A program made the position numbers and the translations under genes. The notes below the pieces were generated by a model. That model saw nothing but the letters and a program-made list of their open reading frames with translations, was not told the origin of the DNA and ran no database searches. A DNA stretch of 64,000 nt from Zygnema circumcarinatum SAG 698-1b (lineage: Eukaryota; Plantae; Zygnematophyceae): contig CM074817.1 in the NCBI GenBank assembly GCA_037447605.1, positions 2,418,001 to 2,482,000 of the forward strand, read 5' to 3'. Below, one piece after another: positions 18,723 through 58,000 of this stretch; position 1 is the first letter of the stretch; each line of letters starts with the position of its first letter.

Positions 18723-21700
18723 CAGCTCACACATTAGATCATCTTTTCATGGAAGGCAAGATGTTGAGTAGTGAGGATGAAGCCGAAAGCCCTCACATGC
18801 GTGCGGAATTTGTGAGGGAACCGATTGAAGTAGGAATGGCTCCGCTGAGACGATTAGAGGAGAGGTCCTTGCCATGCCATAACGTGGATTTGCTCAGAGC
18901 AGAGGAGGCATACTATGCATAGTCCAATGTCAGGCTTTACTCAGCTCTTTTGTAATTTTGAGGACAAACAAAATCTATGTCAGGAGTTAGAGTCCGTAAA
19001 ACCCTCGAACCCTAAACCCCTAGAAGCCTTTAAAAACCTGCAACCCTAAAAGCAAGGTTGCGCGGCGTCCACATGGGCCTCAGCAGTGCTAAAGGCGACA
19101 ACAGCTGCTGCCTGGGCGTGTTCTCATTGTACAGCTCTGTTTGTCGCCGGACACGCAGACGGCGCCAACTCCTGTTGAAGTGCTGAGTGTGGTTTGGGTT
19201 TGCAACTTTAGAAAGGGAACACGAAAAACAAATGAGCACAAATATGGACCGGACCAACCAAAAATTATCAAGCACATTGCATAATTTCAAGATAAACTAA
19301 AAACTTGCCCTCAACTCGCGCATTCTCCACTTTCATATATCCACAAAAAACATCACTTTCCAAGCGCACGAACAACAGAAACTGCAGAACCCAAATTTTC
19401 TCAAAAGGAGCTGAGTTCGGCTGACCAGTCAACACACCAAACCTAGTATCCAAACCAAAAAAAAACGACTTTTTGAGGGTCCTTCGACCGCAGGGCGGAC
19501 GGCGAGTCTGTCTATCTCGGATGCCTTTTGGCCCTCTCATCGAAAGCACACAAAAACTGTAACTGAATGCATGTAGAGCCTTTTAGGGTTTAAGTAGAGT
19601 GCTGCGCCATGTGCGTTCTGCCGCACGCGTGCCTCGAGTCTCCAACTCATAACTTAGACGATAGCTCAAATTCTTCGCAATCAGTACTGAAGAAAGGTCC
19701 CACTCTCTTCTTGAAGATGTGCATTGTGATTGGCCCGCAATCCAACCTCTGCATTCACAGGTCATGCCACCAATATGAGCCCCCGACATATCTCCACGCA
19801 ATTATCTGACACAGCTTGTGACTAAAAAAACAAAACTCATCCCTCACATGACATGTTTTCTCCCTCAACCCGTCTCCTTCCTCTACCTCTTCCCTACGCC
19901 TCTTCCCACCTCTGTCACTTCTTTTACCTTCTTGTAACATCCAGGTAACATCTTCCCCCCCCCACCCCCTGCCCCTCTCTTTTCTCCTCCTTTATTCTTC
20001 ATTTTCATCTTCATCGCCCGAGGAGAAGCAGCAAATACTCACAAACACATAAGGTCGAGTTTCCCGCATTGCTGAAGCCGGCGTTGCAGGTGCATGCAGG
20101 AACATTTTGGAACGAGCAGAATCCGTTGCCGTTGCAGACTCCGCTCGGCTGATTTGCGCCGCAGAAGTTGGCGCACTCCTGGGCGGGCCGCTGCGCTCCG
20201 CTGTAGCACGCGGCGGAGGCTGCCGGAAGTGTGANNNNNNNNNNGAGGAACAAAGTACCAACAACCTTGATGTACCTATACATCAACACAGCTCACACAT
20301 TAGATCATCTTTTCATGGAAGGCAAGATGTTGAGTAGTGAGGATGAAGCCGAAAGCCCTCACATGCGTGCGGAATTTGTGAGGGAACCGATTGAAGTAGG
20401 AATGGCTCCGCTGAGACGATTAGAGGAGAGGTCCTTGCCATGCCATAACGTGGATTTGCTCAGAGCAGAGGAGGCATACTATGCATAGTCCAATGTCAGG
20501 CTTTACTCAGCTCTTTTGTAATTTTGAGGACAAACAAAATCTATGTCAGGAGTTAGAGTCCGTAAAACCCTCGAACCCTAAACCCCTAGAAGCCTTTAAA
20601 AACCTGCAACCCTAAAAGCAAGGTTGCGCGGCGTCCACATGGGCCTCAGCAGTGCTAAAGGCGACAACAGCTGCTGCCTGGGCGTGTTCTCATTGTACAG
20701 CTCTGTTTGTCGCCGGACACGCAGACGGCGCCAACTCCTGTTGAAGTGCTGAGTGTGGTTTGGGTTTGCAACTTTAGAAAGGGAACACGAAAAACAAATG
20801 AGCACAAATATGGACCGGACCAACCAAAAATTATCAAGCACATTGCATAATTTCAAGATAAACTAAAAACTTGCCCTCAACTCGCGCATTCTCCACTTTC
20901 ATATATCCACAAAAAACATCACTTTCCAAGCGCACGAACAACAGAAACTGCAGAACCCAAATTTTCTCAAAAGGAGCTGAGTTCGGCTGACCAGTCAACA
21001 CACCAAACCTAGTATCCAAACCAAAAAAAAACGACTTTTTGAGGGTCCTTCGACCGCAGGGCGGACGGCGAGTCTGTCTATCTCGGATGCCTTTTGGCCC
21101 TCTCATCGAAAGCACACAAAAACTGTAACTGAATGCATGTAGAGCCTTTTAGGGTTTAAGTAGAGTGCTGCGCCATGTGCGTTCTGCCGCACGCGTGCCT
21201 CGAGTCTCCAACTCATAACTTAGACGATAGCTCAAATTCTTCGCAATCAGTACTGAAGAAAGGTCCCACTCTCTTCTTGAAGATGTGCATTGTGATTGGC
21301 CCGCAATCCAACCTCTGCATTCACAGGTCATGCCACCAATATGAGCCCCCGACATATCTCCACGCAATTATCTGACACAGCTTGTGACTAAAAAAACAAA
21401 ACTCATCCCTCACATGACATGTTTTCTCCCTCAACCCGTCTCCTTCCTCTACCTCTTCCCTACGCCTCTTCCCACCTCTGTCACTTCTTTTACCTTCTTG
21501 TAACATCCAGGTAACATCTTCCCCCCCCCACCCCCTGCCCCTCTCTTTTCTCCTCCTTTATTCTTCATTTTCATCTTCATCGCCCGAGGAGAAGCAGCAA
21601 ATACTCACAAACACATAAGGTCGAGTTTCCCGCATTGCTGAAGCCGGCGTTGCAGGTGCATGCAGGAACATTTTGGAACGAGCAGAATCCGTTGCCGTTG

Positions 21701-21800
21701 CAGACTCCGCTCGGCTGATTTGCGCCGCAGAAGTTGGCGCACTCCTGGGCGGGCCGCTGCGCTCCGCTGTAGCACGCGGCGGAGGCTGCCGGAAGTGTGA
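18679..21800. other. Apparently identical direct duplication 18679-20234 / 20245-21800 around a 10-N gap (probable unmerged contig overlap)
   Basis: Offset 1566; all ORFs in the track are identical between the copies. Confidence 0.85.
18797..18868 (-). pseudogene. LRR pseudo-exon DLSSNRLSGAIPTSIGSLTNSARM with acceptor AG changed to AA; repeated at 20363-20434 and 31244-31315
   Basis: Near identical to exon 33039-33110 but acceptor reads caa|GGACC instead of cag|GGACC. Confidence 0.8.
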
Positions 21801-23914
21801 AGCAGTTGCCGGCTACAGCCACTCTGCAGAAGTCAGCGTTGTTGAAACCGATCTTAGGAGTCTCCGAAAGGTAATTTCCGGTAACGTCGATGTAGACGTC
21901 TGCAAAGGCTTTGAAGCGGATCTGCAGTCGGCCGGTCAATAAGTTGTTGCGGAGGAGTCTGCACAGCAAAATTTTGTGGGCTCAGCCCTCAATAAGGCTT
22001 CACTTTTGAACAGTTTTGTGCTTTGCCAATGCTGGCAATGCTATAAACAAGCGCTATCCAATCACACGCTCGAGCATTCAATCGGGTACAGCAATTTTTC
22101 AGACCTGCAAACACAAATAAGGGACTCACATGAGCAGGGAATTCGTGAGAGAACCAATTGACGTAGGAATGGCTCCTCTGAGACGATTATAGGAGAGGTC
22201 CCTGCCCATAGTCCCATGCCATACGGCGCATTTTCTCAGAGCAGAATTGCATGCGATGCACAACCTTCACGATCCTTGCACAAAAAAACCCTTCAACCCT
22301 AGAATCCCAAAAGAGTGAAGTGATTATGTGCCGACATGTACTCCAAGCTGGAAAGGCTTCCAATCGTTGCAGGAATGTTGCCGCTCAACTGGTTGCGGCA
22401 GAGGCGGCTGTGGGGCCCACATGCACCAAAAAGGTCAGTTGGTTACTCTTTCGGCGACTATAAGGTTAATCTGCAGAACGTTATACTTGACAGGAAGCAA
22501 GCAAAAGGCAAAAGCGGCTGCATGTTCCTAGCTGATGTTTGATACTTACAGATTGGTCAAGTTGGTAAGGTTTCCGATTGAAATTGGGATCTCCCCAACG
22601 AGATCATTACCGGACAGGTCCCTGGAGAAGCAGCGAGGCTCTGATTTGTAAGATCACAATCGTTCTAATTCTGAAAAGGATACGAAGCAATTTGATTTCT
22701 GTTTCACACCAAAGCAAGTGTACAGAGTATCGAAAAACTACTACAAAACAAGAGAAAGCATTTGGAAAGCCTTACAAGCTTCTCAGGTTCACGAGTCGAT
22801 CTATGTTTGGGGGGATAACAGAGCTTAGGAAGTTGTCAGATAAATCCCTGCAAATAAAACGGCAAAAAACCGGATTCAAATCACCAGAGAGACAGTGGCT
22901 AAAAATGGTTCTCGACTATTTGTAGGTGATTATTGAATCCACATATTTCATCATATTGCATTTATGGACAGTCTTCGGACGACTCTTGTCTTGTCTTGAT
23001 GCGGCTTCATCACACCTCCCCCGACTGTTTTATCATATATACTGATGGTCTAGAATGCATGAAAAGACAACTAAACAAAAGAGACATATAATGTCGAACA
23101 CTCACAATCGCTGAAGAGTTGTGATGCTGGTGATCGACGAAGAGATGACGCCTAGAAGCGCAGTTTGCTTCAAGTTTCTGCCAACACACGTAGTGCAACA
23201 AAATCATTAGTTAAAGGAGAATTGGAGTAGTGAAATGTTGCAAGATGTCATGGTTTGTGACATGACCCGTTAGGGGATGAAGGGCACAGCGAGGCCGTAC
23301 ATGGCCACAACAGTGCGCCGTCCGCCGCAGTCGACGCCGCGCCATTGGCAGAAGTTGGGCGTTGTGGCCACCCACGAGTCGAGCGCGCCGGAGGGGTCCG
23401 AAGTGATGCCGCTCTTGAACTGCAGGAGGGCGCTCGCTGCGGCACTCGCTGCAGGGGGAACGGCGACGAGCATGAGGGAGGGAGGGAGGGAGGGAGGGAG
23501 GAAGGGAACGTTCTCGCAATCATATTCAGTTGAATGACTGATCGGTCTAATCGCTGAATTCTATTCGACCCTTTCGTCACTCACAATCCAATCGATTCCA
23601 ACTAGAACTTAAGGAGTACTAGGAGTACTAAGTTCTGTTTCCCTTTTATTCCCTTCTGTTTCGCATGCATGTATACATCTTGGGCTTGCACTCCTAGGCT
23701 ACTTCAAAAAAATATCAGGGCTTCTTGTACCTGGAGGAGGTGGACGAATGGGAGGAAGGGGTGGTGATGGAGGAGACAGAGGAACTGGGGGAGGAGGAGA
23801 AAAGGGAGAAGTTGGAGGTAGACGAAAGGGAGGGCGAGGACTGGGAGAACGAGCACTGGGAGGACGAGCACTGGGAGGAGGCCCACAGGGAGGAGGCCGA
23901 CTGGGAGGAGGTAA
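21609..23914 (-). pseudogene. 5'-truncated LRR gene paralog: partial Pro-rich exon, LRRNT, 5 LRR exons, cap/EGF exon (second module only)
   Basis: Exons 23914-23731 (acceptor replaced by unrelated AT-rich DNA), 23448-23301, 23177-23106, 22847-22776, 22621-22550, 22407-22336, 22201-22130, 21958-21609. All are open, but there is no upstream first module or signal-peptide exon. Confidence 0.75.
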
Positions 23915-31169: not shown

Positions 31170-32500
31170 CAGCTCACACATTAGATCATCCTTTCATGGA
31201 AGGCAAGATGTTGAGTAGTGAGGATGAAGCCGAAAGCCCTCACATGCGTGCGGAATTTGTGAGGGAACCGATTGAAGTAGGAATGGCTCCGCTGAGACGA
31301 TTAGAGGAGAGGTCCTTGCCATGCCATAACGTGGATTTGCTTAGAGCAGAGGAGGCATACTATGCATAGTCCAATGTCAGGCTTTACTCCTTAGCTCTTT
31401 CGTAATTTTGAGGACAAACAAAATCTCTGTCAGGATTTAGGGTCCGTAAAACCCTCGAACCCTAAACCCCTAGAAGCCTTTAAAAACCTGCAACCCTAAA
31501 AGCAAGGTTGCGCGGCGTCCACATGGGCCTCAGCAGTGCTAAAGGCGACAACAGCTGCCGCCTGGCGTGTTCTCATTGTACAGCTCTGTTTGTCGCCGGA
31601 CACGCAGACGGCGCCAACTCCTGTTGAAGTGCTGAGTGTGGTTTGGGTTTGCAACTTCAGAAAGGGAACACGAAAAACAAATGAGCACAAATATGGACCA
31701 AATTTATACCAACCAAAAATTATCAAGCACATTGCACAATTTCAAGATAAACTAAAAACTTGCCCTCAACTCGCGCATTCTCCACTTTCATACATCCACA
31801 AAAAACATCACTTTCCAAGCGCACAAACAACAGAAACTGCAGAGCCCAAATTTTCTCAAAAGGAGCTGAGTTCGGCTGACCAGTCAACACACCAAACCTA
31901 ATATCCAAACCAAAAAATAACGACGTTTTGAGGGTCCTTCGACCGCAGGGCGGACGGCGAGTCTGTCTTTCTCGGATGCCTTTTGGCCCTCTCATCAAAA
32001 GCACACAAAAACTGTAACTGAATGCATGTAGAGCCTTTTAGGGTTTAAGCAGAGTGCTGCGCCATGTGCGTTCTGCCGCACGCGTGCCTCGAGTCTCCAA
32101 CTCATAACTTAGACGATAGCTCAAATTCTTCGCAATCAGTACTGAAGAAAGGTCCCATTCTCTTCTTGAAGATGTGCATTGTGATTGGCCCGCCATCCAA
32201 CCTCTGCATTCACAGGTCATGCCACCAATATGAGCCCCCGACATATCTCCACGCAATTATCTGACACAGCTTGTGACTAAAACAACAAAACTCATCCCTC
32301 ACATGACATGTTTTCTCCCTCCTTAACCCGTCTCCTTCGTCTACCTCTTCCCTACGCCTCTTCCCACCTCTGTCACTTCTTTTACCTTCCTGTAACATCC
32401 AGGTAACATCTTCCCCCCCCCACCCCCTGCCCCTCTCTTTTCTCCTCGTTTATTCTTCATTTTCATCTTCATCACCCGAGGAAAGGCAGCAAATACTCAC

Positions 32501-35500
32501 AAACACATAAGGTCGAGTTTCCCGCATTGCTGAAGCCGGCGTTGCAGGTGCATGCAGGGACATTTTGGAAAGAGCAGAATCCGTTGCCGTTGCAGACTCC
32601 GCTCGGCTGATTTGCGCCGCAGAAGTTGGCGCACTCCTTGGCGGGTCGCTGAGCTCCGCTGTAGCACGCGGCGGAGGCTGCCGGAATTGTGAAGCAGTTG
32701 CCGGCTACAGCCACTCTGCAGAAGTCAGCGTTGTTGAAACCGACCTTCGGAGTCTCCGAAAGGTAATTTCCTGTAACGTCGATGTACACATCTGCAAATG
32801 CTTTGAAGCGGATCTGCAGTCGGCCTGTCAATAAGTTGTTGCGGAGGAGTCTGCACAGCACAAGTCGTGTTTCCGGCAGCTGATTAAGCATCAACTTGAA
32901 GGATAGATGTTTTACCCAAAGGTCCGTTAGTGCTACCAATGGTCATGAACTCAAAAGTCCATGTCCAGTTCACACATTAGATCATCCTTTCATGGAAGGC
33001 ACGATGTTGCGTAGTGAGGACGAAACCGAATGTCTCACATGCGTGCGGAATTTGTGAGGGAACCAATTGAAGTAGGAATGGCTCCGCTGAGACGATTAGA
33101 GGAGAGGTCCCTGCCATGCCATAACGCGGATTTGCTTAGAGCAGAAGCGGCATCCCGTGCATAGGCCAATGTCTGGCTTTACTCTTTAGTGTCCTCACGA
33201 GTTATCCCATGGACCCAAAACAAGGCAGGAGGGCTAACTTTACAAACCCTTAAGCAGCGAATCCCTCACAATCCTAAAAAATTATGTAGGGGGATGATAA
33301 AGGTTATTTGCTGACATGTACTCCAGGCTGGAGAGGCTTCCAATCGTTGCTGGAATGCTGCCGCCCAGCTGGTTGCGGCAGAGGCGGCTGTGGGGCCCAC
33401 AAGCATTATAAAGCAAGATATCAGCAGCTCTAATTCTACCTTATAATTGAGAACGTTTAATTATAAACGTCTTGCAATCTGTTGAAATACGATGACCAGA
33501 TATTCTAGAAACAGGCGTCAAGGAGAAGACCCTATGAACATAAAACTAGAGGCTGCAGACGGCTAAGCTTACAGATTTGTCAAGTTTGTGAGGTTTCCAA
33601 TTGAACTTGGAATCTCCCCTGTAAGGTCGTTACCGGACAGATCCCTGCAGACGAGGCAGAACACTGACTTGTAAGCGTGCATGATTCTCGGCAATAGGCA
33701 TGCACCGCTACGATGGATAATTTGAATAACACTTAATAGCTATTGCTCATGGCACATCGCTATTACGGAACATGCCAAAAATGTTTGGAAAGACTTACAA
33801 GCTTTTCAGGTTCACAAGCCGAAAGATGTCCGGCGGAATTACAGAGGTGAAGTAGTTTTCCGATAAGTCCCTGCCAGTCAAATGGCGGTTCACGGATTAA
33901 AATCGCAACGGAGAGGTGGCTGAATACAAAAAGTTCCACACCTGTACACGTGGCTCTTGTGAACTAAAGGTCAGATATGCATCAAGGAGGATTGTAAAAA
34001 CGAAGAACACGAAACGGAGAACACTCACAGTCGCTGAAGAGTGGTGATGCTTGTGATGGACGAAGAGATGACGCCAATAAGTGAAGACTCCTCCAAATTT
34101 CTGGCCACTCACGCAGGACAACGTAAGAATGGATTGAAAAAAAACGGTAGTGGAGAAGCTCTGCTATCCAAAATATGGCTCATTACAGGCTGGCGAGGGA
34201 GAAGCAGAGGCCGTACATGGAGACCACATTGCGGCGCGCGTCGCAGTCGACGCCGCGCCATTGGCAGAAGTTGGGCGTTGTGGCCACCCACGTGTCCAGC
34301 GCACCGGACGGGTCCGAAGTGATGCCGCTCTTGAACTGCAGGAGGGCGCTCACTACGGCAGTCGCTGCATGGGAAATGGAGACGAGTTTGAGGGAGGGGA
34401 CAAGCGAGAGAGATACGGCGATGGAGGACGATAAAGAGAACCTTCTCTCAATCATATTCAGTCGAATGACTGATCGGTCTTAATTGCTGATTTGCATTCG
34501 ATCCTCTGGTTAACTCACAACCCAATCGATTACAACTAGAACTTAAGGAGTACTAGGAGTACTAGGCTCTGTTTTTAGAAGTACTAAGTTNNNNNNNNNN
34601 TAGGAATGGCTCCGCTGAGACGATTAGAGGAGAGGTCCCTGCCATGCCATAACGCGGATTTGCTTAGAGCAGAAGCGGCATCCCGTGCATAGGCCAATGT
34701 CTGGCTTTACTCTTTAGTGTCCTCACGAGTTATCCCATGGACCCAAAACAAGGCAGGAGGGCTAACTTTACAAACCCTTAAGCAGCGAATCCCTCACAAT
34801 CCTAAAAAATTATGTAGGGGGATGATAAAGGTTATTTGCTGACATGTACTCCAGGCTGGAGAGGCTTCCAATCGTTGCTGGAATGCTGCCGCCCAGCTGG
34901 TTGCGGCAGAGGCGGCTGTGGGGCCCACAAGCATTATAAAGCAAGATATCAGCAGCTCTAATTCTACCTTATAATTGAGAACGTTTAATTATAAACGTCT
35001 TGCAATCTGTTGAAATACGATGACCAGATATTCTAGAAACAGGCGTCAAGGAGAAGACCCTATGAACATAAAACTAGAGGCTGCAGACGGCTAAGCTTAC
35101 AGATTTGTCAAGTTTGTGAGGTTTCCAATTGAACTTGGAATCTCCCCTGTAAGGTCGTTACCGGACAGATCCCTGCAGACGAGGCAGAACACTGACTTGT
35201 AAGCGTGCATGATTCTCGGCAATAGGCATGCACCGCTACGATGGATAATTTGAATAACACTTAATAGCTATTGCTCATGGCACATCGCTATTACGGAACA
35301 TGCCAAAAATGTTTGGAAAGACTTACAAGCTTTTCAGGTTCACAAGCCGAAAGATGTCCGGCGGAATTACAGAGGTGAAGTAGTTTTCCGATAAGTCCCT
35401 GCCAGTCAAATGGCGGTTCACGGATTAAAATCGCAACGGAGAGGTGGCTGAATACAAAAAGTTCCACACCTGTACACGTGGCTCTTGTGAACTAAAGGTC

Positions 35501-38500
35501 AGATATGCATCAAGGAGGATTGTAAAAACGAAGAACACGAAACGGAGAACACTCACAGTCGCTGAAGAGTGGTGATGCTTGTGATGGACGAAGAGATGAC
35601 GCCAATAAGTGAAGACTCCTCCAAATTTCTGGCCACTCACGCAGGACAACGTAAGAATGGATTGAAAAAAAACGGTAGTGGAGAAGCTCTGCTATCCAAA
35701 ATATGGCTCATTACAGGCTGGCGAGGGAGAAGCAGAGGCCGTACATGGAGACCACATTGCGGCGCGCGTCGCAGTCGACGCCGCGCCATTGGCAGAAGTT
35801 GGGCGTTGTGGCCACCCACGTGTCCAGCGCACCGGACGGGTCCGAAGTGATGCCGCTCTTGAACTGCAGGAGGGCGCTCACTACGGCAGTCGCTGCATGG
35901 GAAATGGAGACGAGTTTGAGGGAGGGGACAAGCGAGAGAGATACGGCGATGGAGGACGATAAAGAGAACCTTCTCTCAATCATATTCAGTCGAATGACTG
36001 ATCGGTCTTAATTGCTGATTTGCATTCGATCCTCTGGTTAACTCACAACCCAATCGATTACAACTAGAACTTAAGGAGTACTAGGAGTACTAGGCTCTGT
36101 TTTTAGAAGTACTAAGTTCTGTTTCCTTTTTTCCCTTTGAGTGTTGCACGCATATGGACATGTTGGGCTTTCACTCCTAGGCTAGCTCAAAACAAAGCTT
36201 CTTGTACCTGGAGGAGGTGGACGAACGGGAGAGAGGGCTGGTGATGAAGGAGACAGAGGAAGTGGGGGAGGAGGAGAAAAGGGAGAAGTTGGAGGGAGAT
36301 GAATGGGAGGGCGAGGACTGGGAGGACGAGCACTGAGAGGAGGCTGACTGGGAGGAGTACTGGGAGGAGGCGTACTGGGAGGAGGCCCACAGGGAGGAGG
36401 AGTACTGGGAGGAGGCCGACTGGGAGGAGGTCTAGGGGGAGGTGCATTTGATCCTGCACATACACCAAGCGCAAGATCAGACATTCCGCGAGACGCCCAT
36501 GTGTGTATGGCAATTCAACGAGCGTCCAATATGTTCGGAATTCTAAATCGTACACGCGTGAGCGAATCCCATCTGCAGCATGTGCCGGATAGCCTTCAAC
36601 GGCCGGCGGATGAGGTTACCTCTGATAAAAGAACGGTCTACATCTGATCCATATTTTCCACTTCAAAGAACAAGATCTCATGTCCTCGAATGCATTCTGT
36701 GGAGCGGGACTAACATAGAAGTTTGATTCTGGAACATGTTTACCTTTGGCACAAGTAAATTTACTGGATGTTGTGGCATAGCCTGAATCGCAGACGCATG
36801 TTGGGCGACCCGTAGTGTTTGAGCAGAGTCCGAAGCCGCCGCATGCACCGCCGGACTGAAGGGCGTTGCAAAATGCTGTGCACTCAGATACGTCCTTTTG
36901 TCCANNNNNNNNNNTGGCGGTTCACGGATTAAAATCGCAACGGAGAGGTGGCTGAATACAAAAAGTTCCACACCTGTACACGTGGCTCTTGTGAACTAAA
37001 GGTCAGATATGCATCAAGGAGGATTGTAAAAACGAAGAACACGAAACGGAGAACACTCACAGTCGCTGAAGAGTGGTGATGCTTGTGATGGACGAAGAGA
37101 TGACGCCAATAAGTGAAGACTCCTCCAAATTTCTGGCCACTCACGCAGGACAACGTAAGAATGGATTGAAAAAAAACGGTAGTGGAGAAGCTCTGCTATC
37201 CAAAATATGGCTCATTACAGGCTGGCGAGGGAGAAGCAGAGGCCGTACATGGAGACCACATTGCGGCGCGCGTCGCAGTCGACGCCGCGCCATTGGCAGA
37301 AGTTGGGCGTTGTGGCCACCCACGTGTCCAGCGCACCGGACGGGTCCGAAGTGATGCCGCTCTTGAACTGCAGGAGGGCGCTCACTACGGCAGTCGCTGC
37401 ATGGGAAATGGAGACGAGTTTGAGGGAGGGGACAAGCGAGAGAGATACGGCGATGGAGGACGATAAAGAGAACCTTCTCTCAATCATATTCAGTCGAATG
37501 ACTGATCGGTCTTAATTGCTGATTTGCATTCGATCCTCTGGTTAACTCACAACCCAATCGATTACAACTAGAACTTAAGGAGTACTAGGAGTACTAGGCT
37601 CTGTTTTTAGAAGTACTAAGTTCTGTTTCCTTTTTTCCCTTTGAGTGTTGCACGCATATGGACATGTTGGGCTTTCACTCCTAGGCTAGCTCAAAACAAA
37701 GCTTCTTGTACCTGGAGGAGGTGGACGAACGGGAGAGAGGGCTGGTGATGAAGGAGACAGAGGAAGTGGGGGAGGAGGAGAAAAGGGAGAAGTTGGAGGG
37801 AGATGAATGGGAGGGCGAGGACTGGGAGGACGAGCACTGAGAGGAGGCTGACTGGGAGGAGTACTGGGAGGAGGCGTACTGGGAGGAGGCCCACAGGGAG
37901 GAGGAGTACTGGGAGGAGGCCGACTGGGAGGAGGTCTAGGGGGAGGTGCATTTGATCCTGCACATACACCAAGCGCAAGATCAGACATTCCGCGAGACGC
38001 CCATGTGTGTATGGCAATTCAACGAGCGTCCAATATGTTCGGAATTCTAAATCGTACACGCGTGAGCGAATCCCATCTGCAGCATGTGCCGGATAGCCTT
38101 CAACGGCCGGCGGATGAGGTTACCTCTGATAAAAGAACGGTCTACATCTGATCCATATTTTCCACTTCAAAGAACAAGATCTCATGTCCTCGAATGCATT
38201 CTGTGGAGCGGGACTAACATAGAAGTTTGATTCTGAAACATGTTTACCTTTGGCACAAGTAAATTTACTGGATGTTGTGGCATAGCCTGAATCGCAGACG
38301 CATGTTGGGCGACCCGTAGTGTTTGAGCAGAGTCCGAAGCCGCCGCATGCACCGCCGGACTGAAGGGCGTTGCAAAATGCTGTGCACTCAGATACGTCCT
38401 TTTGTCCACTCCAGGGACAGGTGTCACTTGAAGACTCACCCAAACAGTTGGAAATCACAACCGGACACAATTCATATCCTAGTGAATAGAGAGTCAGTGG

Positions 38501-41500
38501 CTTTGCCATGAAGTTGTAACTGAAGTCAACAGACGGTACGACGCCTCCAAGGAAATTTATGGTTTCTGACCCCGTCAGAAGATTGTTGTTGACGTTCCTG
38601 TATTCCAGACACACTTTTCTTAGTCGCTTCCATACATCTCATGTCAAACGAAGGAAACGCGTATGTGTTGTTTAACCTGCAGTTGACGTCTCAGAAATGT
38701 GACACTTGCGAAGTTCCAGAGGTGGAGAATCACGCACTTGTCCATGAAGGATACGAAATAGCTGTAATGGTTTCAGCTTGTACTGTACGAGGCATTTTAC
38801 ATCATAACACAAGTCTCACCTTCACTTCTGGACTTTCACAGGCAAGTGCAGAAGCATCCTTTGGAAAATGATAAAATGTTGTCATCTATTTACTCACAAT
38901 TGGGCAAGGCTTCGGATGCTCCCAATAGTAGAAGGTATGATGCGTCCGAATTGGTTATACGATAAGTCCCTGCACCATAAACAGAGAAGTGAAAATGAGA
39001 ATTCACACCACACACGTCTGTCTTCAATGTCTTGCATGTCGAAGTAAGAACATCTGCGGCCCTTATACTATGAGGCTATTCAAGTTTTGAAGGATGTTCC
39101 TGGATTAGAAGAACATACAGATTCGCAAGCTTTGTGAAGTTTGCGATGCTTGCAGGTATCTGGTCGATGAAACTGTTATGGGAAACATTACTGCGCACAA
39201 AAAAGAATCAGACATTGCTCAAGCTTAGTCACTCTCAGTCACATAGGCATGCTTTTGGCGAGCGCATAGTGAACAAGTCTTTCAAAATAGACTGTCTGAT
39301 CCAGGAAAAGGACACATGTAGACTCCATGATGGTATGGTCAAAACAGGACAGGTCACGTGACGCCATTAGAAAAAATTGTATTTAAGAACATCTCGAAGG
39401 AATGGGATGCCTGGGACAGAGAAAGGGCCGGAAACAAAGGAATCGTCACTTTCTCAGAATTTTCAACATTGTGCGGTTAGATTCCATTTGAATTCAAGGC
39501 AAATTTTTTCCCAGTAAAGAAAAATATCAGAGACATACAACCAAGCTGGACGTAAATTTATTTGAGCCCTTGAGATTTATCAAGCAAGATTTGAGGACTC
39601 ACAGAGTGACGAGACTTGTCAAGTTTCCAACTGCGCCAGAGAAAAGGCTACCCGAAAATTTGTTGTAGGCCGTATTTCTGTACACAAGTTCTTAGGGCTT
39701 TAAGGGATGCTTTTAACGTTGCATGTTCCACTATGTGCCATGTCAACACTAAATAAATCATTCGTAAGCATACCTTTAAAACTTAACCAGCCCTTCAACA
39801 AGACTAGGGCCCTTCCCCGGATAGCGTCTATTTGCAACGACAATGCCCACATTACTTTTGGCCTTGATGACATCCAAAGAGGTCAGACTTCCCCTTTCGC
39901 TTACAGATATGTGAGCCTCTTCAGATCGCCAAATGCAGAAGGCAAATTGCCAGAAAACTGATTGCCATTGATTTTCCTACACGGAGCGAGTGAAGAAATC
40001 AACAACGTTTCGAGGTTGCGATGCTTGAAGACCAACAAAGTAAAACGGAGATTTCTGCCATCGGAAGCAATTACGAAGGACGAGAGCAGAAATAGCAAGA
40101 CGATGACAGAGCTGCTTGCCACCGCAGACACTACCAGGAGCCTGTCTTAAATGAGTACAATCTGCACATGAAGAAACCTTTGTTAAATTTGAGAACCTTT
40201 GATATGACACCTAATCATTTAGCGAGTGAAAAATTGGGAGTTTGACTGTAAAGGATGAGCGAAGGAAGTGTTCAATTCAGTAGTCTCTTTGACGTGGTGA
40301 AGTGCTGGTTCTGCACAAGCCTTACATGGTAGTGAGGTTGCGTAATGCTCCGATTTGTGGTGGCAAGACGCCACTCAGAAAGTTGTTCGACAAGTCCCTG
40401 CTCCCATTGACATGAGCAGGGCACCAATCAGCAAAGCAATAGAGCAAGCTCAAAACGACCTGAATGAAGAAATCCATTGCATAGTATAATGGTGATGTGC
40501 ACAGACTCACCTCAGGCCCTGTGGGGAGACTTTCTCAGATGAGACACAATCGACACAAATGAAGAAATCTTTGGAAATGTTGAGAACATTTTTATGCGAC
40601 ACCGAATGATTCAGCGAATGACAAGTTGAGTGTTGGACTGTCAAGCATAGCGCAGAGAGTGTGCTGTTGAGCTGTCTGTTTGACGTGCTAAAGTGTTGGT
40701 TCTGCACTGTCCTTACAAGTAAGTGAGGTTTTGTAATGTTGCGACTTGTGCTGGCCAGGGGCCAGTCAGATAGTTGGAAGACAAGTCCCTGCTCCCATTT
40801 CACATAAGCGGTGCACCAATAAGCACAGCAATAGGAAGAGTAACCGATCACCTGAATGAAGAAATTCAGTCCACATTTCAAATAGTGATGTGCGATTAGG
40901 AAGGTGAGGACATGAAAGTGCTTACTGAGAAACGAGAACTTTAAGGAATATAATGAAATTTGTCTAAAAGGAGAAGTAATCCTGAAGTATGAAAATAAAT
41001 GCATCAGTAAAAAGGAAATCGCTAAGTTTACATAAGAGATCACTAACTGAGGTAACGGACTTAACAAGGCGCCTCGTGCTCTCAAGAATGTTTTCGTTCC
41101 TTAGAGTTCATGAAGGGACTTTCGAGGGCATATAAGGGTTTGTTACGGGATAACTTTAAGTAACATATACGGTGCAACCGAATGCATCAAAATTTACAGG
41201 AATCAGTTATCTCAGTTGCTAGAAAGGCCTGAAAGTCGACTTGAGGAGCTTCATCTCTCTCTCTCTCTCCCCTCTCTCACTCTCTCTCTCTCACACTCTC
41301 AGGAGTGGCGGAGTGGGTGGCTGGCCGATCAAGACCTGCTTCATCGGCTTCACGCTCGTGTGGGCGGACATCAGACATGGTTAGTCCTCAAACAAGAACC
41401 ACTCCCAGTTAAGGGCTTCCATGTACAAAGAAATGGACATAATGCAAGGTCAGACCTTGAGGATCAGATATTATATATATCGTCAAAAGAACAGTGTTGG

Positions 41501-42700
41501 AAAACAGTTTGGTGAGGGATGGCGGGGAGAGTTCTGAAGAACCCATCGAGCAATAGGGGCAAGGAAAGGATCAGGATGCAGGCTTTGAGAATAGTCGACG
41601 TCATACAGATATTGAAGGCTTCGAAGGTTCCCTATTTGCGGAGAAATTGTTCCACCAGGACTACGTGCTGCAAGTGTCCTGCACATGGAGCCTGCCACTG
41701 CACGTAAGCACGATCATGGTTGAATGCATCACGTCGTTACGTTGACGTCAAGAATCAAGAAACACAATTTTTTACTTTGAAGGAATGCAGTCCTTTAAGC
41801 ACCTGGCGATGCAAGCAAGCATGCTCTCGAGAGATCATTCATTCCAAGTTTTCATTTACATGTGAGGACATGGGGCAAGGTAGAACAGCTCCCAATTCCT
41901 AATGTCTTCTTTGCATTCATTACACACGTATTGTCTACAGAAATGAACTTTTCCTCCTCATCCTTTTGGTCAGCACATGTGAACTACAAAGGCATATGTC
42001 TTCTGCTCATATGGACAAGTCGCGTTCAATGGTAGGTAGAGGATTTGTTTTTGAGGGGGTGCATAGCCTTCCCTCTGCATAAAATACATAAACTATATAC
42101 ATGAAATAAAATGAAAATAAGAAAAGGGTTGAATTTTCAAAATCTGACAAAGGGAATAAGCCCCCGCAAGTTTTCTATGTAGGTCCACCCCTGGCTGCAT
42201 GGCGCCGTGGCTGCCCGGTCCTTACATTGCAGTGATGCGTCCGTCTCCATTACATGCTACAAGGAGGTAGTTGTCGTCACACTGCGTATTTATGTCAAAG
42301 GAGTACCCATTTAAACCCAGGGTAGACACTATCGCATTCCAAGCGTTCCCTGCGCAGAAAAATTTAAACAAAAAACTTGCAGTGTGTTACCCGCTTCCCT
42401 CCTTCATGCGATCGTCGAAATGAGAGCAAACATCGCCAGGCGCTTGCAACGACCTTGTCTGCATCGACTATCGCTGCACTGGCTACCCCTAATACGGTAC
42501 CAGTGCAAGACCTGCACATGGAGTTCTATGTGGGTCTAGTTCAGTCCAACGGTGAGCGTGACAGCGAACAGCGCCATGGAGCCGCAAGCAGCGGATGCCT
42601 TACGGTCGTCGTCGTTCATCAACTGCCCCGCAACCCGCGGCGGTCCGGACAGTGTGCAGCAGAGCGCCACGAGGAAGAGCAGCATGGCGCCACGTGGCAT
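32501..42700 (-). CDS. Predicted secreted tandem double LRR-EGF protein with Pro-rich hinge (SP-LRRNT-7xLRR-cap/EGF-ProRich-LRRNT-5xLRR-cap/EGF), ~727 aa plus unresolved C-terminus
   Basis: Exons 42700-42604 (MPRGAMLLFLVALCCTLSGPPRVAG), 42349-42226, 41678-41607, 40788-40717, 40397-40326, 39976-39905, 39677-39603, 39190-39119, 38969-38898, 38597-38248, 37957-37712, 37396-37249, 37132-37061. After collapsing gap-flanking duplicates: 33870-33799, 33644-33573, 33387-33316, 33110-33039, 32850-32501. All GT-AG, phase-compatible, no stops. Confidence 0.75.
33073..36118. other. Apparently identical direct duplication 33073-34590 / 34601-36118 around a 10-N gap (probable contig overlap)
   Basis: Offset 1528; identical ORFs in the track. 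Confidence 0.85.
35411..38408. other. Apparently identical direct duplication 35411-36904 / 36915-38408 around a 10-N gap (probable contig overlap)
   Basis: Offset 1504; identical ORFs in the track. Confidence 0.85.
37712..37957 (-). CDS. Proline-rich hinge exon (PPPS-type, HRGP-like) linking the two LRR-EGF modules
   Basis: gtgcag|GA TCA AAT GCA CCT CCC CCT ... CCT CCT CCA G|gtacaa; 246 nt, phase 1-1. Confidence 0.75.
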
Positions 42701-51514: not shown

Positions 51515-51559
<45 letters not shown>

Positions 51560-54950: not shown

Positions 54951-55063
54951 TTATGAAAAAGAGGTAATATGGATCGAAGAAAAACGGTATTGGTGACTCC
55001 TGCAAAGTAGATCATTCACAATATGTCTCATTCGAGGCTGACGGAGAGAAGCGGAGGTCGTAT

Positions 55064-58000
55064 ATGGAGACCGCATTGCGGCGTCCATCGCAGTCGACGC
55101 CGCGCCATTGGCAGAAGTTGGGCGTTGTGGCCACCCACGAGTCGAGCGCGCCGGAGGGGTCCGAAGTGATGCCGCTCTTGAACTGCAGGAGGGCGCTCGC
55201 TGTGGCACTCGCTGCAGGGGGAAACGGAGACGAGCTTGAGGGAGGGGAACAGTGAGAGAGATACGGCGATGGAGGAAGAGAGAGTGAACCTTCTTGCAAT
55301 CATATTCAGTTGAATGACTGATCGGTCGTAATTGCTGGTTTGCATTCGATAGTTTGGTTAACTCACAATCCAATCGATTTCAACTTCAAATTTGAGTCTG
55401 ACGCATGCTTTTAGGGGTACTATGTTCTGTTTCCCTTTTCGCCCCTTGGAGTGTTGCACGCATATGGAAATGTTGGGCCTTCACAGGCTTGCAGATGACA
55501 TGATTGCTACTGACATTCCTTACGACATTCCTCACGATATTCTCTCTGATACAGTAAACTGTGGTCCATTATCCATAAGTTTCACTTTCAGGAACAAGGT
55601 CCCACGTCCCATTAATAAATCTCAGGGAAAGACTGTAGTATAATATCCTTTAATATACTTTTTACCAATTCCAAGGTCTTAATTTTGTGAAATAGCCTAA
55701 ACTGCAGACACATATTGGGCCAGCCGAGGGAGATAGAGAGAGGCTGGAGGGCAGGAGAGAGAGGGAGGGGGAAAGAGAGGCTCGGAAAAGTAAGATGGTA
55801 AAGGGAGAGGGATAGGAGCCGTGGTTGAGGGGGAAACGGAGGCGAGGGAGATACGACGAACGAAAAGGGAGAAGGTGGAGAAAGAAGGGGGAGAACGAGA
55901 GAGGGCGAGGGAATGAAGCTGAAGTGAGTGGGACAGAGAGAGAGGAAGGGAGAGATGGAGAGGAGGGGGAAAGGGAAAGGGGGAGCAGGAGGGAGAGGGA
56001 GGAGAGAGAGAGGGAAGAGGGAAATGAGGGCAGATTAAGAAGAGATGAACGGGGAGAAAGGAAAGGAGAACGAAGGAAAGGGAGGAAGGAGGGAAAAGTA
56101 GATGCGGTGGTTAAAGGAAAGTGCATGAGGAGGCAGAGTGAGAGGACGTGGCGGCAAGGGGGAAAGGCTTTTATAATACTAAATTTGCTTCAGTGAAATG
56201 CTTGCTTGATATTGAGAGCCGACCTGCATTCACAGTCATTTCTTGCAGGCACAATCGAATTGATTTCCATTCAGAGTGTGATTCGACAGTCTCGTGTCAT
56301 CAAAATTTGGTCGTGGTTATGTTTGTCCTTATCTTCTCGTGGCACTCCTTTTGACCATTTATTGTGGGTTTTGTTGGTTATTTCAAACAAGTGAGGGCTT
56401 CTTGTACCTGGAGGAGGTGGACGAATGGGAGGAAGGGGTGGTGATGGAGGAGACTGAGCAATTGGTGGAGGAGAAAGGAGAGAAGCTGGAGGGAGAGGGA
56501 TGGGAGGTCGAGCACTTGGAAGAGGCTGACTGGGAGGAGGTCGAGGGGGAGGAGGTTGAAACAGAGGTGTACTTGATACTGCACAAGCATGAAGCGCAAG
56601 ATCAAACATTTCGCAAGAGGTCCATATACATATGGCAAGGACATGTCAACGAGTTTCCAATATGTTCGGAATTCTAATTTGTTCAGACTTAAGTGAGTCT
56701 CTTCTTCATCATGTGCCGCATAGCCTTCACTGGCCGGCGGAAGAGGTATATCTGATAGAATGAACTGTCTAGTTTTGGTCCATGGTTTCCACTTCAAGGA
56801 ACAAGATCTCATGTCCTCAAATGCATTATGTGGAGCGGGACTAACATAGAAGTTTGATTCTGAAAGGAGTTTACCTTTGGCACAGGTAAAATTACTGGAT
56901 GTTGTGGTATAGCCTGAATCGCAGATGCATGTTGGGCCAGCCGTCGAATTTGAACAAAATCCGAAGCCGCCGCATGCACCGCCGGACTGAAGGGCGTTGC
57001 AAAACGATGTGCACAAAGATACGTCCTTTTGTCCATTCCAGAGACAGGTGTCACTTGAGGACTCATCCAAACAGTTGGAAATCACATTCGGGCAGAAATC
57101 AAATCCTTGTGCGTAGAAAGTCAGTGGTTTTGTCATGAAGTTGTAACTGAAGTCAACAGAGTATATTATTTCCAAGGAAATTTATGGTTTCTGACCCCGT
57201 AAAAAGATTGTTGTTGGCGTTCCTGTAATCCCACACACGCCATTGTTAGTCACTTGTACACATGTGAAGCCAAAAGCAGAAACTAGTACGTGCTGTTTGA
57301 ACGCGAAGTTGAAGTGCCGAAATAGTAACATTTACGAAGTCCTCAAAGGTGGCGAGAAAAGCATCTTTCCATAGAGGATTCTGAAAAGCTGTAATGGTTT
57401 AGGCCTGTTTTGTATGAGGCGGTTTGTAACATAGCACAAGACTCGCCTTCACTCGTGGACTCTCTCATGCAAAAGCTGAAGCATACTGTTGAAATTATTG
57501 AATGCAGTTTCCTATTTACTCACAATCGAGCAAGGCTTCTGCTGTTCCCGATGGTAGAAGGTATGAGGCCGCCGAATTGGTTATAGGATAAGTCCCTGCA
57601 CAATAAACAGACAAGAATATTTGAGATTGTAGACCACACATGTCTGCCTTCAATGTCTTGCATGTTGAAATAAAAACATTTGTACCGCTTATATTATGTG
57701 GTTACTCAAGTTCTGAAGGATTTCTCGGATTAGAAGAACATACAAAATCACAAGCTTTGTGACGTTTGCGATGCTTGCAGGTATCTTGCCGGTGAAACTA
57801 TTATAGGAAACATCACTGCGCATAAACAGAATAAGACATTGCTCAAGCTTAGAAGCACTCAGTAACAAAGGCATGCTTTTGGCGAGCGCATAATGAACAA
57901 GGCTTTCAGAATGAACTGTATGATCCAGGAAAAGAACACATGTAGACTCCATGATGGGATGGTTCAAGCAGGACAGGTCACGGGACGCCATTAGCAAACA

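What the first reader, a model, noticed from the sequence alone, without database searches (positions are those of the whole stretch)
32501..42700. Tandem double LRR-EGF protein joined by an HRGP-like hinge: an unusual secreted receptor-like architecture
Seen: the second LRRNT exon (ALLQFKSGITSDPSGALDTW..C.W.GV.C) has a strong phase-1 acceptor and no signal peptide. In every copy with upstream sequence available it follows a phase-1 Pro-rich exon, which in the intact arrangement follows a phase-1 EGF exon. So what looks like two gene families splices into one ORF, and the same order recurs at 55-60.7 kb and partly at 21.6-23.9 kb. Known: LRR-RLK/RLP have one LRR ectodomain, LRX proteins have LRR plus a terminal extensin, and EGF repeats occur in WAK and S-domain kinases. 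I do not know this two-headed arrangement as a described plant family. Inference: a bivalent cell-wall ligand-binding, adhesion, or mating/immune recognition protein.
Basis: partly seen in the sequence, partly recalled or inferred. Interest (0 to 1): 0.85.

Follow-up and report, generated by a model that had tools for sequence, protein, structure and literature searches.

The report
Two-headed secreted LRR-EGF wall protein
One expressed algal gene really does splice two different leucine-rich-repeat/EGF binding heads onto the two ends of a proline-rich rod, giving a secreted dumbbell-shaped protein of a kind I found in no paper, although the three-fold repeat of its middle exons in the assembly is an artefact.

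Summary
The two 10-N gaps are unmerged contig overlaps. The flanks are 100% and 99.93% identical, and the identity stops exactly at the Ns. So 34591-37622 is redundant, and each exon exists once.

RNA contigs from four public runs carry GT..AG junctions at exactly the predicted places: EGF1 to Pro exon (38248/37957) and Pro exon to LRRNT2 exon (37712/37396). Their depths match those of all other junctions in the gene. The intron before LRRNT2 has zero depth over 37506-37702.

The spliced frame is open for 736 aa: signal peptide, N-cap, 9 LRR, Cys cap and EGF1. Then comes an 82-aa hinge with 42 Pro, then LRRNT_2, 6 LRR, Cys cap, EGF2 and a stop. There is no transmembrane segment.

The two heads are only 29% identical and resemble different single-head relatives. 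This points to a fusion through phase-1 exons, not an internal duplication.

Named relatives of the LRR-cap-EGF module come only from Zygnematophyceae (Mesotaenium, Closterium); the other hits are unnamed transcript ORFs. There the module is joined to kinases, papain-LysM or nothing. A few Closterium gene models repeat it several times.

A role as a bivalent wall or matrix linker or sensor is inference. The 3' end and full-length continuity on one molecule still need long reads. I rate it a new variant of a known kind, of moderate interest.

The parts
42604..42700 (-). Exon 1: ATG at 42700 and signal peptide (hydrophobic core LLFLVALCCTL); donor in phase 1
   Evidence: Joint 42603/42348 in 4 RNA runs. 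It is the only stretch with mean Kyte-Doolittle hydropathy above 1.6. A minor alternative donor lies at 42511.
42226..42349 (-). Exon 2: degenerate two-Cys N-terminal cap of head 1
   Evidence: Joints 42348/42603 and 41677/42225; translation. No Pfam hit.
38898..41678 (-). Exons 3-9: seven single-LRR exons of head 1, all phase 2-2 (41678-41607, 40788-40717, 40397-40326, 39976-39905, 39677-39603, 39190-39119, 38969-38898)
   Evidence: GT..AG joints in all 4 runs; plant-type 24-residue LRR consensus in the translation.
38248..38597 (-). Exon 10: last LRRs, 4-Cys C-terminal cap and 6-Cys EGF-like domain 1; donor in phase 1
   Evidence: Joints 38897/38596 and 38247/37956. Pfam EGF_2 E=4.6e-4, just under the cut-off. 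AlphaFold model pLDDT 89. Residues 70-116 superpose on EGF domains and residues 1-102 on the LRX8 C-terminal part.
37712..37957 (-). Exon 11: proline-rich hinge, 82 aa, 42 Pro, eight PPP/PPPP runs separated by S/T/R, one SPPPP, no Tyr; phase 1-1
   Evidence: One RNA contig (311 nt, depth 474 in X1) runs from 23 nt of exon 10 through the whole exon into 43 nt of exon 12. Composition.
37249..37396 (-). Exon 12: LRRNT_2 cap of head 2; acceptor in phase 1 (identical copies at 35745-35892 and 34217-34364 are assembly redundancy)
   Evidence: Pfam LRRNT_2 E=5.5e-12. Joints 37712/37396 and 37249/37132. Bin 37506-37702 of the intron has depth 0.
37061..37132 (-). Exon 13: first LRR of head 2
   Evidence: Joint 37249/37132. 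The loose end at 37060 continues for about 250 nt into the next exon's sequence, found at 33869.
33039..33870 (-). Exons 14-17: four single-LRR exons of head 2 (33870-33799, 33644-33573, 33387-33316, 33110-33039)
   Evidence: The start of the first is RNA-supported by the loose end. The others are predicted from AG/GT sites, 72-nt length, phase 2 and an open frame. dN/dS against paralog P3 is 0.05-0.46.
32472..32850 (-). Exon 18: last LRRs, Cys cap, EGF-like domain 2, stop at 32474-32472; AATAAA about 22 nt after the stop
   Evidence: Predicted acceptor. Conserved Cys pattern with exon 10. RNA runs hold 0.53-0.63 of the words of 32100-32850, which equals the exon plus about 30-105 nt.
34591..37622 (.). 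Assembly redundancy: two 10-N gaps plus sequence that repeats the flanks; not real DNA order
   Evidence: 1518-bp 100% and 1494-bp 99.93% dovetail overlaps end exactly at the gaps; 33883-34590 equals 36915-37622.
55015..60716 (-). Paralog P2: signal peptide, head 1, EGF1, shorter Pro exon, LRRNT2 in the same order, but frameshifted and lacking the rest of head 2
   Evidence: tblastn and ORFs; frameshift near 57185; conserved splice sites; dN/dS 0.61 for cap+EGF1.
21580..23914 (-). Paralog P3: Pro exon (5'-truncated), LRRNT2, LRRs, EGF2
   Evidence: Module 2 dN/dS against P1 is 0.16 over 253 codons.

Best explanation
**What it is.** It is a single, expressed, 18-exon gene on the minus strand, 42700 to 32472 once the redundant 34591-37622 is removed. 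It encodes a 736-aa secreted chimeric proline-rich glycoprotein.

**Shown:**
- Domain order: signal peptide; head 1 (two-Cys N-cap, 9 plant-type LRRs, 4-Cys cap, EGF-like domain); an 82-aa Pro-rich hinge; head 2 (LRRNT_2, 6 LRRs, 4-Cys cap, EGF-like domain); stop.
- The exon chain through the hinge is spliced in RNA, and the reading frame is open.
- There is no membrane anchor in the model.
- The two heads are old and different (29% identity).

**Inferred origin.** A head-1 gene of the 'LRR-EGF-Pro tail' type fused to a downstream 'signal peptide-LRRNT-LRR-EGF' gene. The phase-1 donor after EGF1 and the 1-1 Pro exon replaced the phase-1 signal-peptide exon of the second gene.

**Inferred function.**
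- The hinge is hydroxylated and O-glycosylated. It forms a polyproline-II rod of up to about 25 nm (82 residues at 3.1 A each).
- The rod holds two different LRR binding surfaces apart.
- The protein then acts in the wall or mucilage as a bivalent linker or adaptor. It could tie two ligands (a peptide or protein and a wall component, or two cells) together. Alternatively it could work like an LRX-type wall-bound ligand sensor with a second head in place of the long extensin anchor.
For: - **Junctions:** 13 GT..AG joints in RNA contigs of 4 runs. They include EGF1 to Pro (depth 474/320/602/202) and Pro to LRRNT2 (474/358/387/260). The other main joints run at 96-830.
- **Hinge contig:** one unbranched contig spans both hinge junctions (record 1).
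- **Introns:** intronic depth is 0 in 37506-37702. Bin 37900-38096 shows no depth beyond its exonic part.
- **Frame:** open across all junctions; 736 aa.
- **Domains:** Pfam LRRNT_2 at 5.5e-12; EGF families just under threshold. The fold model has pLDDT 89 and matches EGF domains and the LRX8 C-terminal region.
- **Anchoring:** the only hydrophobic segment is N-terminal.
- **Heads:** 29% identical, with different best relatives: P0087/P0001 for head 1, P0006/P0044 for head 2.
- **Exon phases:** the signal-peptide exon donor and the LRRNT2 acceptor are both phase 1.
- **Selection:** purifying on head 2, dN/dS 0.16.
- **Gene end:** single-head relatives end 1-4 residues after the EGF. The RNA word share fits an end 30-105 nt past the stop.
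- **Family context:** the same module is joined to other partners through Pro-rich linkers in Mesotaenium and Closterium.
Against: - No single RNA molecule covering all 18 exons was seen. Continuity is a chain of short-contig junctions.
- Exons 15-18 and the stop are predicted, not RNA-verified.
- A strong GTGAGT donor sits one codon after the last EGF2 Cys (about 32500). If used, it could lead to unseen downstream exons such as an anchor.
- Secretion, hydroxylation, glycosylation and any ligand are inferred only.
- The hinge has one SPPPP and no Tyr motifs, so covalent extensin-type cross-linking is not indicated.
- Paralog P2 is degraded, which shows the arrangement can be lost.
Confidence: 0.65

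Rival explanations
1. Two adjacent genes: an LRX-like 'LRR-EGF-Pro tail' gene and a separate 'LRRNT-LRR-EGF' gene. The junction reads would come from minor read-through (conjoined) transcripts.
For: Single-head proteins of both types exist elsewhere as complete ORFs: P0087 is SP-LRR-EGF-Pro tail with its own stop, and P0088 is SP-LRRNT-LRR-EGF. An in-frame ATG with a weakly hydrophobic stretch lies upstream of LRRNT2 at 37487.
Against: The hinge junction depths equal those of constitutive junctions in all 4 runs. The contig through the Pro exon is unbranched at both ends. The ATG at 37487 lies in the intron, and 37506-37702 has depth 0. The Pro exon has no in-frame stop before its donor.
Confidence: 0.07
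2. A membrane-anchored receptor-like protein. The gene continues past EGF2 through the GTGAGT donor at about 32500 to further exons (Pro-rich stalk, transmembrane segment, perhaps kinase), as in the Mesotaenium LRR-EGF-Pro-TM-kinase relatives.
For: The strong donor sits in phase 1, close to the position homologous to the EGF1 donor. Read-through adds an unpaired seventh Cys. Relatives P0013, P0025 and P0012 are LRR-EGF-(Pro)-TM-kinase.
Against: No Pro-rich, TM-like or kinase ORF lies on the minus strand in the 5 kb downstream. tblastn finds only a solitary LRR relic there. The RNA word share of 32100-32850 fits the exon plus a 30-105-nt tail, and AATAAA lies 22 nt after the stop. Many relatives end right after the EGF.
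Confidence: 0.12
3. Assembly chimera or real tandem triplication: the adjacency of the modules, or the three LRRNT2 copies, reflects mis-scaffolding or a true 1.5-kb tandem array rather than one gene.
For: Two gaps interrupt the locus, and the repeats are 1.5 kb long.
Against: The EGF1-Pro-LRRNT2 adjacency lies within one gap-free contig (36915-43130). RNA confirms it independently of the assembly. It recurs in paralog P2. The repeat identities (100% and 99.93%) end exactly at both gap edges, and the same signature is seen at gap 20235. That is the mark of unmerged overlaps, not of evolved repeats.
Confidence: 0.04
4. A decaying or non-functional member of a fast-evolving tandem cluster: transcribed, but not making a working two-headed protein.
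For: The cluster holds a frameshifted copy (P2), truncated copies, solitary exon relics and retroelement fragments.
Against: P1 has an intact 736-codon frame across 17 introns. All Cys of both caps and EGFs are conserved. RNA depth is high. dN/dS is 0.16 for head 2.
Confidence: 0.08

Closest known systems
LRX (leucine-rich repeat extensin) proteins of land plants
   Same: Both are secreted and have an N-terminal LRR domain, then a Cys-rich region, then a Pro-rich HRGP-type segment (definition in PMC4477543). The best structural match of the cap region is the C-terminal part of LRX8 (6tme, Z 5.4).
   Different: Here the Pro-rich part is short (82 aa) and internal. It has one SPPPP and no Tyr cross-link motifs, and a second LRR-EGF head follows it. 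The Cys-rich part contains a full EGF-like domain. RALF binding is unknown, and no sequence-level orthology was shown.
Pherophorins of volvocine green algae
   Same: [quoted passage not shown] Both are extracellular-matrix proteins in large, fast-evolving families (PMC9818292).
   Different: The heads here are LRR-EGF modules, not pherophorin domains. The lineage is different (streptophyte relatives). The resemblance is of design, not descent.
Unnamed zygnematophyte LRR-cap-EGF family (e.g. Mesotaenium endlicherianum ME000153S01472, ME000166S01720; Closterium sp. Naga37s-1 CAI5512993.1, CAI5509354.1)
   Same: They share the same last-LRR/4-Cys cap/6-Cys EGF module (profile E down to 3e-14). 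A Pro-rich linker often follows the module, and the module is used as a portable N-terminal head. Closterium models P0043, P0084 and P0015 repeat it with an LRRNT after each linker.
   Different: Most members are single-headed, joined to a TM-kinase or papain-EGF-LysM, or free. The Closterium repeats have a shortened EGF-like part and short, only partly Pro-rich linkers. They are unverified gene models, and P0015 has hydrophobic stretches between units that suggest fused tandem genes. The best hit is only 69 bits, so this gene has no close relative in the library.
Animal Slit and multi-cluster Toll ectodomains (from my own knowledge, not tested here)
   Same: In Slit the LRR domains are combined with EGF repeats.
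   Different: No homology beyond the generic LRR and EGF folds was shown. They have no Pro-rich rod, and their LRRs are not of the plant-specific type.
Plant LRR receptor-like proteins and kinases
   Same: They share plant-type 24-residue LRRs, the LRRNT_2 cap and a signal peptide. The one-LRR-per-exon structure is as in some LRR-RLK subfamilies.
   Different: There is no transmembrane segment or kinase in the model. There are two separately capped solenoids instead of one, and EGF-like domains follow the caps.

Membership tests
Plant-specific extracellular LRR proteins (LRRNT_2 type) | LRRNT_2 N-terminal cap | tested here: met
   Head 2: Pfam PF08263 E=5.5e-12, 46 bits against a cut-off of 20.7. 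The head 1 cap is degenerate (two Cys, no Pfam hit).
Plant-specific extracellular LRR proteins (LRRNT_2 type) | 24-residue LxxLxLxxNxLxGxIP repeats and an N-terminal signal peptide | tested here: met
   Nine plus six repeats are read from the spliced translation. The N-terminal hydrophobic core was found by hydropathy scan. No dedicated signal-peptide predictor was available.
EGF-like domain | Six Cys with C-x-C and Gly/aromatic spacing; EGF fold | tested here: inconclusive
   The pattern is present and conserved in both heads and 29 relatives. Pfam EGF_2 scores 20.9 bits against a cut-off of 22.1. Model residues 70-116 superpose on fibrillin, selectin and factor X EGF domains at rmsd 2-3 A over 36-40 residues, but Z is only 2-4 and Foldseek E is above 1.
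LRX (LRR-extensin) | C-terminal extensin domain with many Ser-Pro(3-5) repeats and Tyr cross-link motifs | tested here: not met
   The hinge has one SPPPP, no Tyr and 82 aa. It is internal, not terminal.
LRX (LRR-extensin) | LRR domain followed by a Cys-rich region packing on its C-terminus | tested here: inconclusive
   The best structural match of the exon-10 model is LRX8 residues 316-393, Z 5.4, 24% identity. That is below the level that separates relatives from common arrangements.
LRX (LRR-extensin) | Binding of RALF peptides | not testable with these tools
LRR receptor-like protein / receptor kinase | Single-pass transmembrane segment (and a kinase for RLKs) | tested here: not met
   No 19-residue window above 1.6 mean hydropathy except the signal peptide. 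No kinase or TM ORF within 5 kb downstream. This depends on the predicted stop at 32472.
Pherophorin | Pherophorin globular domains flanking the Pro-rich rod | tested here: not met
   The Pfam scan of the head and hinge exons returned only LRRNT_2 and EGF-type hits. Only the dumbbell design is shared.
Zygnematophyte LRR-cap-EGF module family (defined here by profile A1) | Last LRR, 4-Cys cap with invariant N-C, Q-(R/K), then F-C-N-A...G-x-C-G-G-x-G-x-C...C-x-C EGF | tested here: met
   Both heads score 8e-61 and 5e-58 against the profile. There are 86 library hits. The named ones come from Mesotaenium and Closterium; two named only by Trinity transcript ids carry no organism. Invariant columns.

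The most novel reading that the evidence does not exclude
Multi-headed LRR-EGF proteins strung on Pro-rich rods may be a distinct class of extracellular 'beads-on-a-rod' recognition or adhesion proteins specific to zygnematophytes (the closest algal relatives of land plants). They would be assembled by phase-1 exon shuffling of a portable LRR-cap-EGF head. The same head is also found on kinases and on papain-LysM enzymes. This would parallel animal matrix-protein evolution (Slit-like LRR+EGF) and volvocine pherophorins. The two-headed form would physically couple two different ligands, for example in wall-integrity sensing, mucilage organisation or conjugation.
Probability: 0.3. Interest if true: 0.7.

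Novelty: new variant of a known kind. Interest (0 to 1): 0.55.

Why it matters
**Streptophyte surface proteins.** LRR ectodomains are the main ligand-binding device of plant cell surfaces. How they were combined with wall-anchoring HRGP segments (as in LRX) before land plants arose is poorly known. This locus gives an RNA-verified example, from an alga whose nearest database relatives are Zygnematophyceae. In it an LRR-Cys-rich-Pro-rich arrangement carries a second, different LRR head.

**Domain shuffling.** The same LRR-cap-EGF head is shuffled onto kinases and proteases in related algae. That makes domain-shuffling through phase-compatible exons in streptophyte surface proteins directly testable. 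It also offers a candidate bivalent wall or matrix protein for biochemical work.

**Annotation.** The 10-N gaps in this assembly can be unmerged overlaps that duplicate exons and break gene models.

Tried and rejected
1. **Real tandem triplication of the LRRNT2/Pro exons.** Rejected: the identity blocks end exactly at the gap edges, and the middle contig is wholly contained in its neighbours.
2. **Separate start for module 2 at ATG 37487 (MIERRF...).** Rejected: it lies in the spliced-out intron, whose 37506-37702 bin has zero RNA depth.
3. **Read-through into intron 10 ending after EGF1.** Bin 38097-38293 looked too deep. In run X7 it is accounted for exactly by the exon contig (47 nt at 273.6) plus the junction contig (23 nt at 202). 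Bin 37900-38096 shows no intronic excess. Rejected.
4. **Finding the annotated protein of this locus.** The profile search of 1.84 billion representatives gave no hit above 69 bits. No full-length protein id was available, so the whole protein could not be folded or searched as one piece. Spliced sequences have no reference and were not typed in.
5. **Literature.** Five full-text searches found no description of LRR-EGF or two-headed LRR proteins in streptophyte algae. Two apparent hits were 'eGFP' matches.
6. **3' end.** The second run search gives only word shares (0.53-0.63). These fit a short 3' UTR but cannot exclude use of the GTGAGT donor.
7. **Fold search.** Foldseek E-values were all above 1, as expected for a 116-aa two-part model. 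Only the consistency of the EGF and LRX matches is used.
8. **Downstream scan.** The minus strand of 27.4-32.5 kb was scanned for Pro-rich, TM or kinase exons. None was found.


Full report
**1. The gaps first**

A self-comparison of the region and a test of every N run in the window give the same picture.
- The 1518 bases left of gap 34591-34600 are 100% identical to the 1518 bases right of it.
- The 1494 bases left of gap 36905-36914 are 99.93% identical to the 1494 bases right of it. The single mismatch is 36732 G against 38236 A, which is intronic.
- In both cases the identity begins and ends exactly at the contig ends.
- In addition, 33883-34590 equals 36915-37622.

This is the signature of dovetail overlaps that the scaffolder did not merge. 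The middle contig (34601-36904) is wholly contained in its two neighbours. Gap 20235-20244 shows the same thing (1556 bp, 100%). The sequence on the two sides of each gap is therefore redundant, not continuous. The real path on the minus strand is ...38408 to 37623, then 34590 to 32472. The three LRRNT2 exons and two Pro exons in the finding's range are one of each.

**2. The observation**

- **Head 2 cap:** the LRRNT2 exon matches Pfam LRRNT_2 at E=5.5e-12.
- **Cys-rich exons:** the two align with 26 invariant columns. These include a 4-Cys cap and a 6-Cys EGF-like pattern.
- **EGF status:** Pfam EGF families hit just under their thresholds (EGF_2, 20.9 bits against 22.1).
- **Fold check:** I folded the exon-10 product with an alignment of 31 relatives. 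Mean pLDDT was 89.
  - Residues 70-116 superpose on fibrillin, selectin, C1r and factor X EGF domains.
  - Residues 1-102 superpose on the C-terminal LRR and Cys-rich part of LRX8.
  - All scores are modest: Z up to 5.4, Foldseek E above 1.
  - 'EGF-like' is well founded as a pattern and plausible as a fold, but not a significant database match.

**3. Is it one transcript?**

I laid the contigs of four public runs of the same organism on 36915-42800.
- **The runs behave as RNA.** There are 13 joints whose skipped parts all begin GT and end AG on the minus strand. Exonic depths are in the hundreds, and intronic depths are 0-26.
  - 38247/37956 (+1), EGF1 exon to Pro exon: depth 474, 320, 602, 202.
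  - 37712/37396, Pro exon to LRRNT2 exon: depth 474, 358, 387, 260.
  - The other main joints have depths of 96-830.
- **One contig spans the hinge.** A 311-nt contig runs from the end of exon 10 through the whole Pro exon into exon 12 without a branch.
- **The intron before LRRNT2 is silent.** Its 37506-37702 bin has depth 0 in all four runs. The only in-frame ATG upstream of LRRNT2 (37487) lies in this intron.
- **The chain continues into head 2.** Beyond exon 13 the contigs run for about 250 nt into sequence that matches the next LRR exon at 33869. This is what the collapsed path predicts.
- **One apparent depth excess is explained.** The excess next to the EGF1 donor comes from overlapping contigs. 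In X7 the arithmetic is exact, and the rest of that intron shows none.

One limit remains: these are short contigs. Continuity of all exons on one molecule is a chain of junctions, not a single read.

**4. The gene model**

Joining the RNA-supported exons gives an open frame through the hinge. Four 72-nt phase-2 LRR exons and a final exon, predicted from splice sites and frame, complete a 736-aa protein. Its parts in order:
- signal peptide;
- two-Cys N-cap;
- 9 LRRs;
- cap and EGF1;
- an 82-aa hinge with 42 Pro, eight PPP/PPPP runs, one SPPPP and no Tyr;
- LRRNT_2;
- 6 LRRs;
- cap and EGF2;
- a 10-residue tail and the stop.

The only strongly hydrophobic stretch is the signal peptide.

Exon phases are telling. 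The signal-peptide exon ends in phase 1. So do the EGF1 exon and the Pro exon (1-1), and the LRRNT2 exon begins in phase 1.

**5. The 3' end**

This is the weakest point. A strong GTGAGT lies one codon after the last EGF2 Cys and could be a donor.

Evidence against its use:
- No Pro-rich, transmembrane or kinase ORF follows within 5 kb.
- AATAAA lies about 22 nt after the stop.
- Complete single-head relatives end 1-4 residues after their EGF.
- RNA runs hold 0.53-0.63 of the sampled words of 32100-32850. That equals the exon plus some 30-105 nt.

I put about 0.8 on the stop at 32472.

**6. Paralogs in the window**
- **P2 (60716 to 55015)** has the same order: signal peptide, head 1, EGF1, a shorter Pro exon, LRRNT2. 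All three hinge splice sites are conserved. It carries a frameshift in the cap exon, a 1-kb low-complexity insert, and no further head-2 exons. Its dN/dS is 0.61. It is probably a pseudogene.
- **P3 (23914 to 21580)** has Pro, LRRNT2, LRRs and EGF2. Similarity breaks off inside the Pro exon. Its head 2 shows dN/dS 0.16 against P1 over 253 codons.

The arrangement therefore predates these duplications, and head 2 is under purifying selection.

**7. Relatives elsewhere**

I searched a profile of the cap+EGF module of both heads against 1.84 billion cluster representatives. It gave only 86 hits at E below 1e-3, the best at 69 bits. The gene has no close relative there.

Named hits come from Mesotaenium endlicherianum and three Closterium strains; two carry only Trinity transcript ids with no organism. 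The rest are unnamed transcript ORFs. The module occurs in these forms:
- free secreted SP-LRRNT-LRR-cap-EGF (P0088, P0019, P0030, P0047);
- SP-LRR-cap-EGF with a short Pro tail and its own stop (P0087);
- LRR-EGF-Pro-TM-kinase (P0013, P0025, P0012);
- LRR-EGF-(lectin)-papain-EGF-LysM (P0016, P0028, P0044, P0091).

The last group matches earlier unverified notes on this genome (s1-321692, s1-321710).

Head 1 and head 2 are 29% identical and have different best relatives: P0087 for head 1, P0006 and P0044 for head 2. The two-headed gene therefore looks like a fusion of two family members, not an internal duplication.

Three Closterium sp. Naga37s-1 gene models repeat 'LRR, cap, short EGF-like, 30-60-aa linker, LRRNT' three or more times. 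One of them has hydrophobic stretches between units and may be fused tandem genes. Multi-headed forms are thus rare but not unique to this locus. None was found described in the searchable literature.

**8. How it most likely works**

Shown:
- one spliced, open, highly represented mRNA;
- a signal peptide and no anchor in the model;
- two different capped LRR solenoids, each with an EGF-like domain;
- a Pro-rich spacer.

Inferred from established knowledge of HRGPs:
- The hinge is hydroxylated and O-glycosylated. It adopts a polyproline-II rod of up to about 25 nm.
- That gives a dumbbell like the pherophorins (PMC9818292).
- The first half resembles an LRX protein, with an LRR binding domain, a Cys-rich part and an HRGP segment (PMC4477543). 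It lacks the long Tyr-containing extensin anchor, which a second binding head replaces.

The most economical function is a bivalent extracellular linker or adaptor in the wall or mucilage. Which ligands it binds is unknown. The cluster is a fast-evolving tandem array with pseudogenes, relics and retroelements. This is compatible with recognition roles (microbes, mating), but it is no evidence for them.

**9. Verdict**

The architectural interpretation is supported by RNA. The function is inference. It is a new variant of known kinds (LRR-HRGP chimeras, dumbbell HRGPs) within a zygnematophyte module family not described in the papers I could search. Interest is moderate: 0.55.

Noticed in passing
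window 20235-20244 and 62887-62896: Gap 20235-20244 is another unmerged dovetail overlap (1556 bp, 100%). The flanks of gap 62887-62896 repeat with an offset of 2163 bp (the ORFs at 61.0-61.7 kb recur at 63.2-63.9 kb) but with an indel. The 10-N gaps of this assembly may often duplicate sequence.
   Followed up: partly
window 55015-60716 (minus): Paralog P2 has a 1-nt frameshift in the cap+EGF1 exon near 57185. It has a roughly 1-kb CT-rich low-complexity insert (56189-55615) in the Pro-to-LRRNT2 intron and no head-2 LRR or EGF2 exons downstream. It is a likely pseudogene.
   Followed up: partly
window 21112-21968 and 19546-20234 vs 32001-32860; 23288-23911 vs 35731-36385: P3 and P1 are 97% identical over the EGF2 exon and 470 bp downstream, but only about 82% identical over the LRRNT2/Pro region. 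This mosaic suggests gene conversion or a recent partial duplication.
   Followed up: no
window 31243-31314, 20362-20433, 18796-18867 (minus): Exon-17-like LRR copies (96% aa identity to 33110-33039) lie downstream of the EGF2 exons, solitary at 31.3 and 18.8 kb. They look like relics of partial duplications.
   Followed up: no
window 43860-45686 and 8173-9661 (minus): Retroelement ORFs are present: integrase and RT-like at 43.9-45.7 kb, and gag zinc-knuckle and protease-like at 8.2-9.7 kb. Long (CT/GA)n and GR/GE-coding simple repeats lie at 1.1-2.7, 12.6-13.3 and 28-29.9 kb.
   Followed up: no
window 50207-51605 (minus): A further fragment of head-1-type LRR exons and introns lies here (76-82% identical to 39786-41346). 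It abuts the 314-N gap at 51606.
   Followed up: no
window 42511 / 42603 (minus): Exon 1 has a minor alternative donor at 42511 (depth 11-26 in two runs) beside the main one at 42603 (depth 96-441).
   Followed up: no
window 38312, 38336, 38367: RNA contigs of three runs carry a linked variant (A>G, G>A, G>A) in the EGF1 exon at about 9-23% of depth. This could be an allele or a near-identical copy elsewhere in the genome.
   Followed up: no
L001:130-1038 (Logan contig of SRR8128904): The closest database relative of head 1 (P0087) is a complete 302-aa ORF: signal peptide, LRRs, cap, EGF, then a 48-aa Pro-rich tail and a stop. It is an LRX-like single-head form in another organism.
   Followed up: partly
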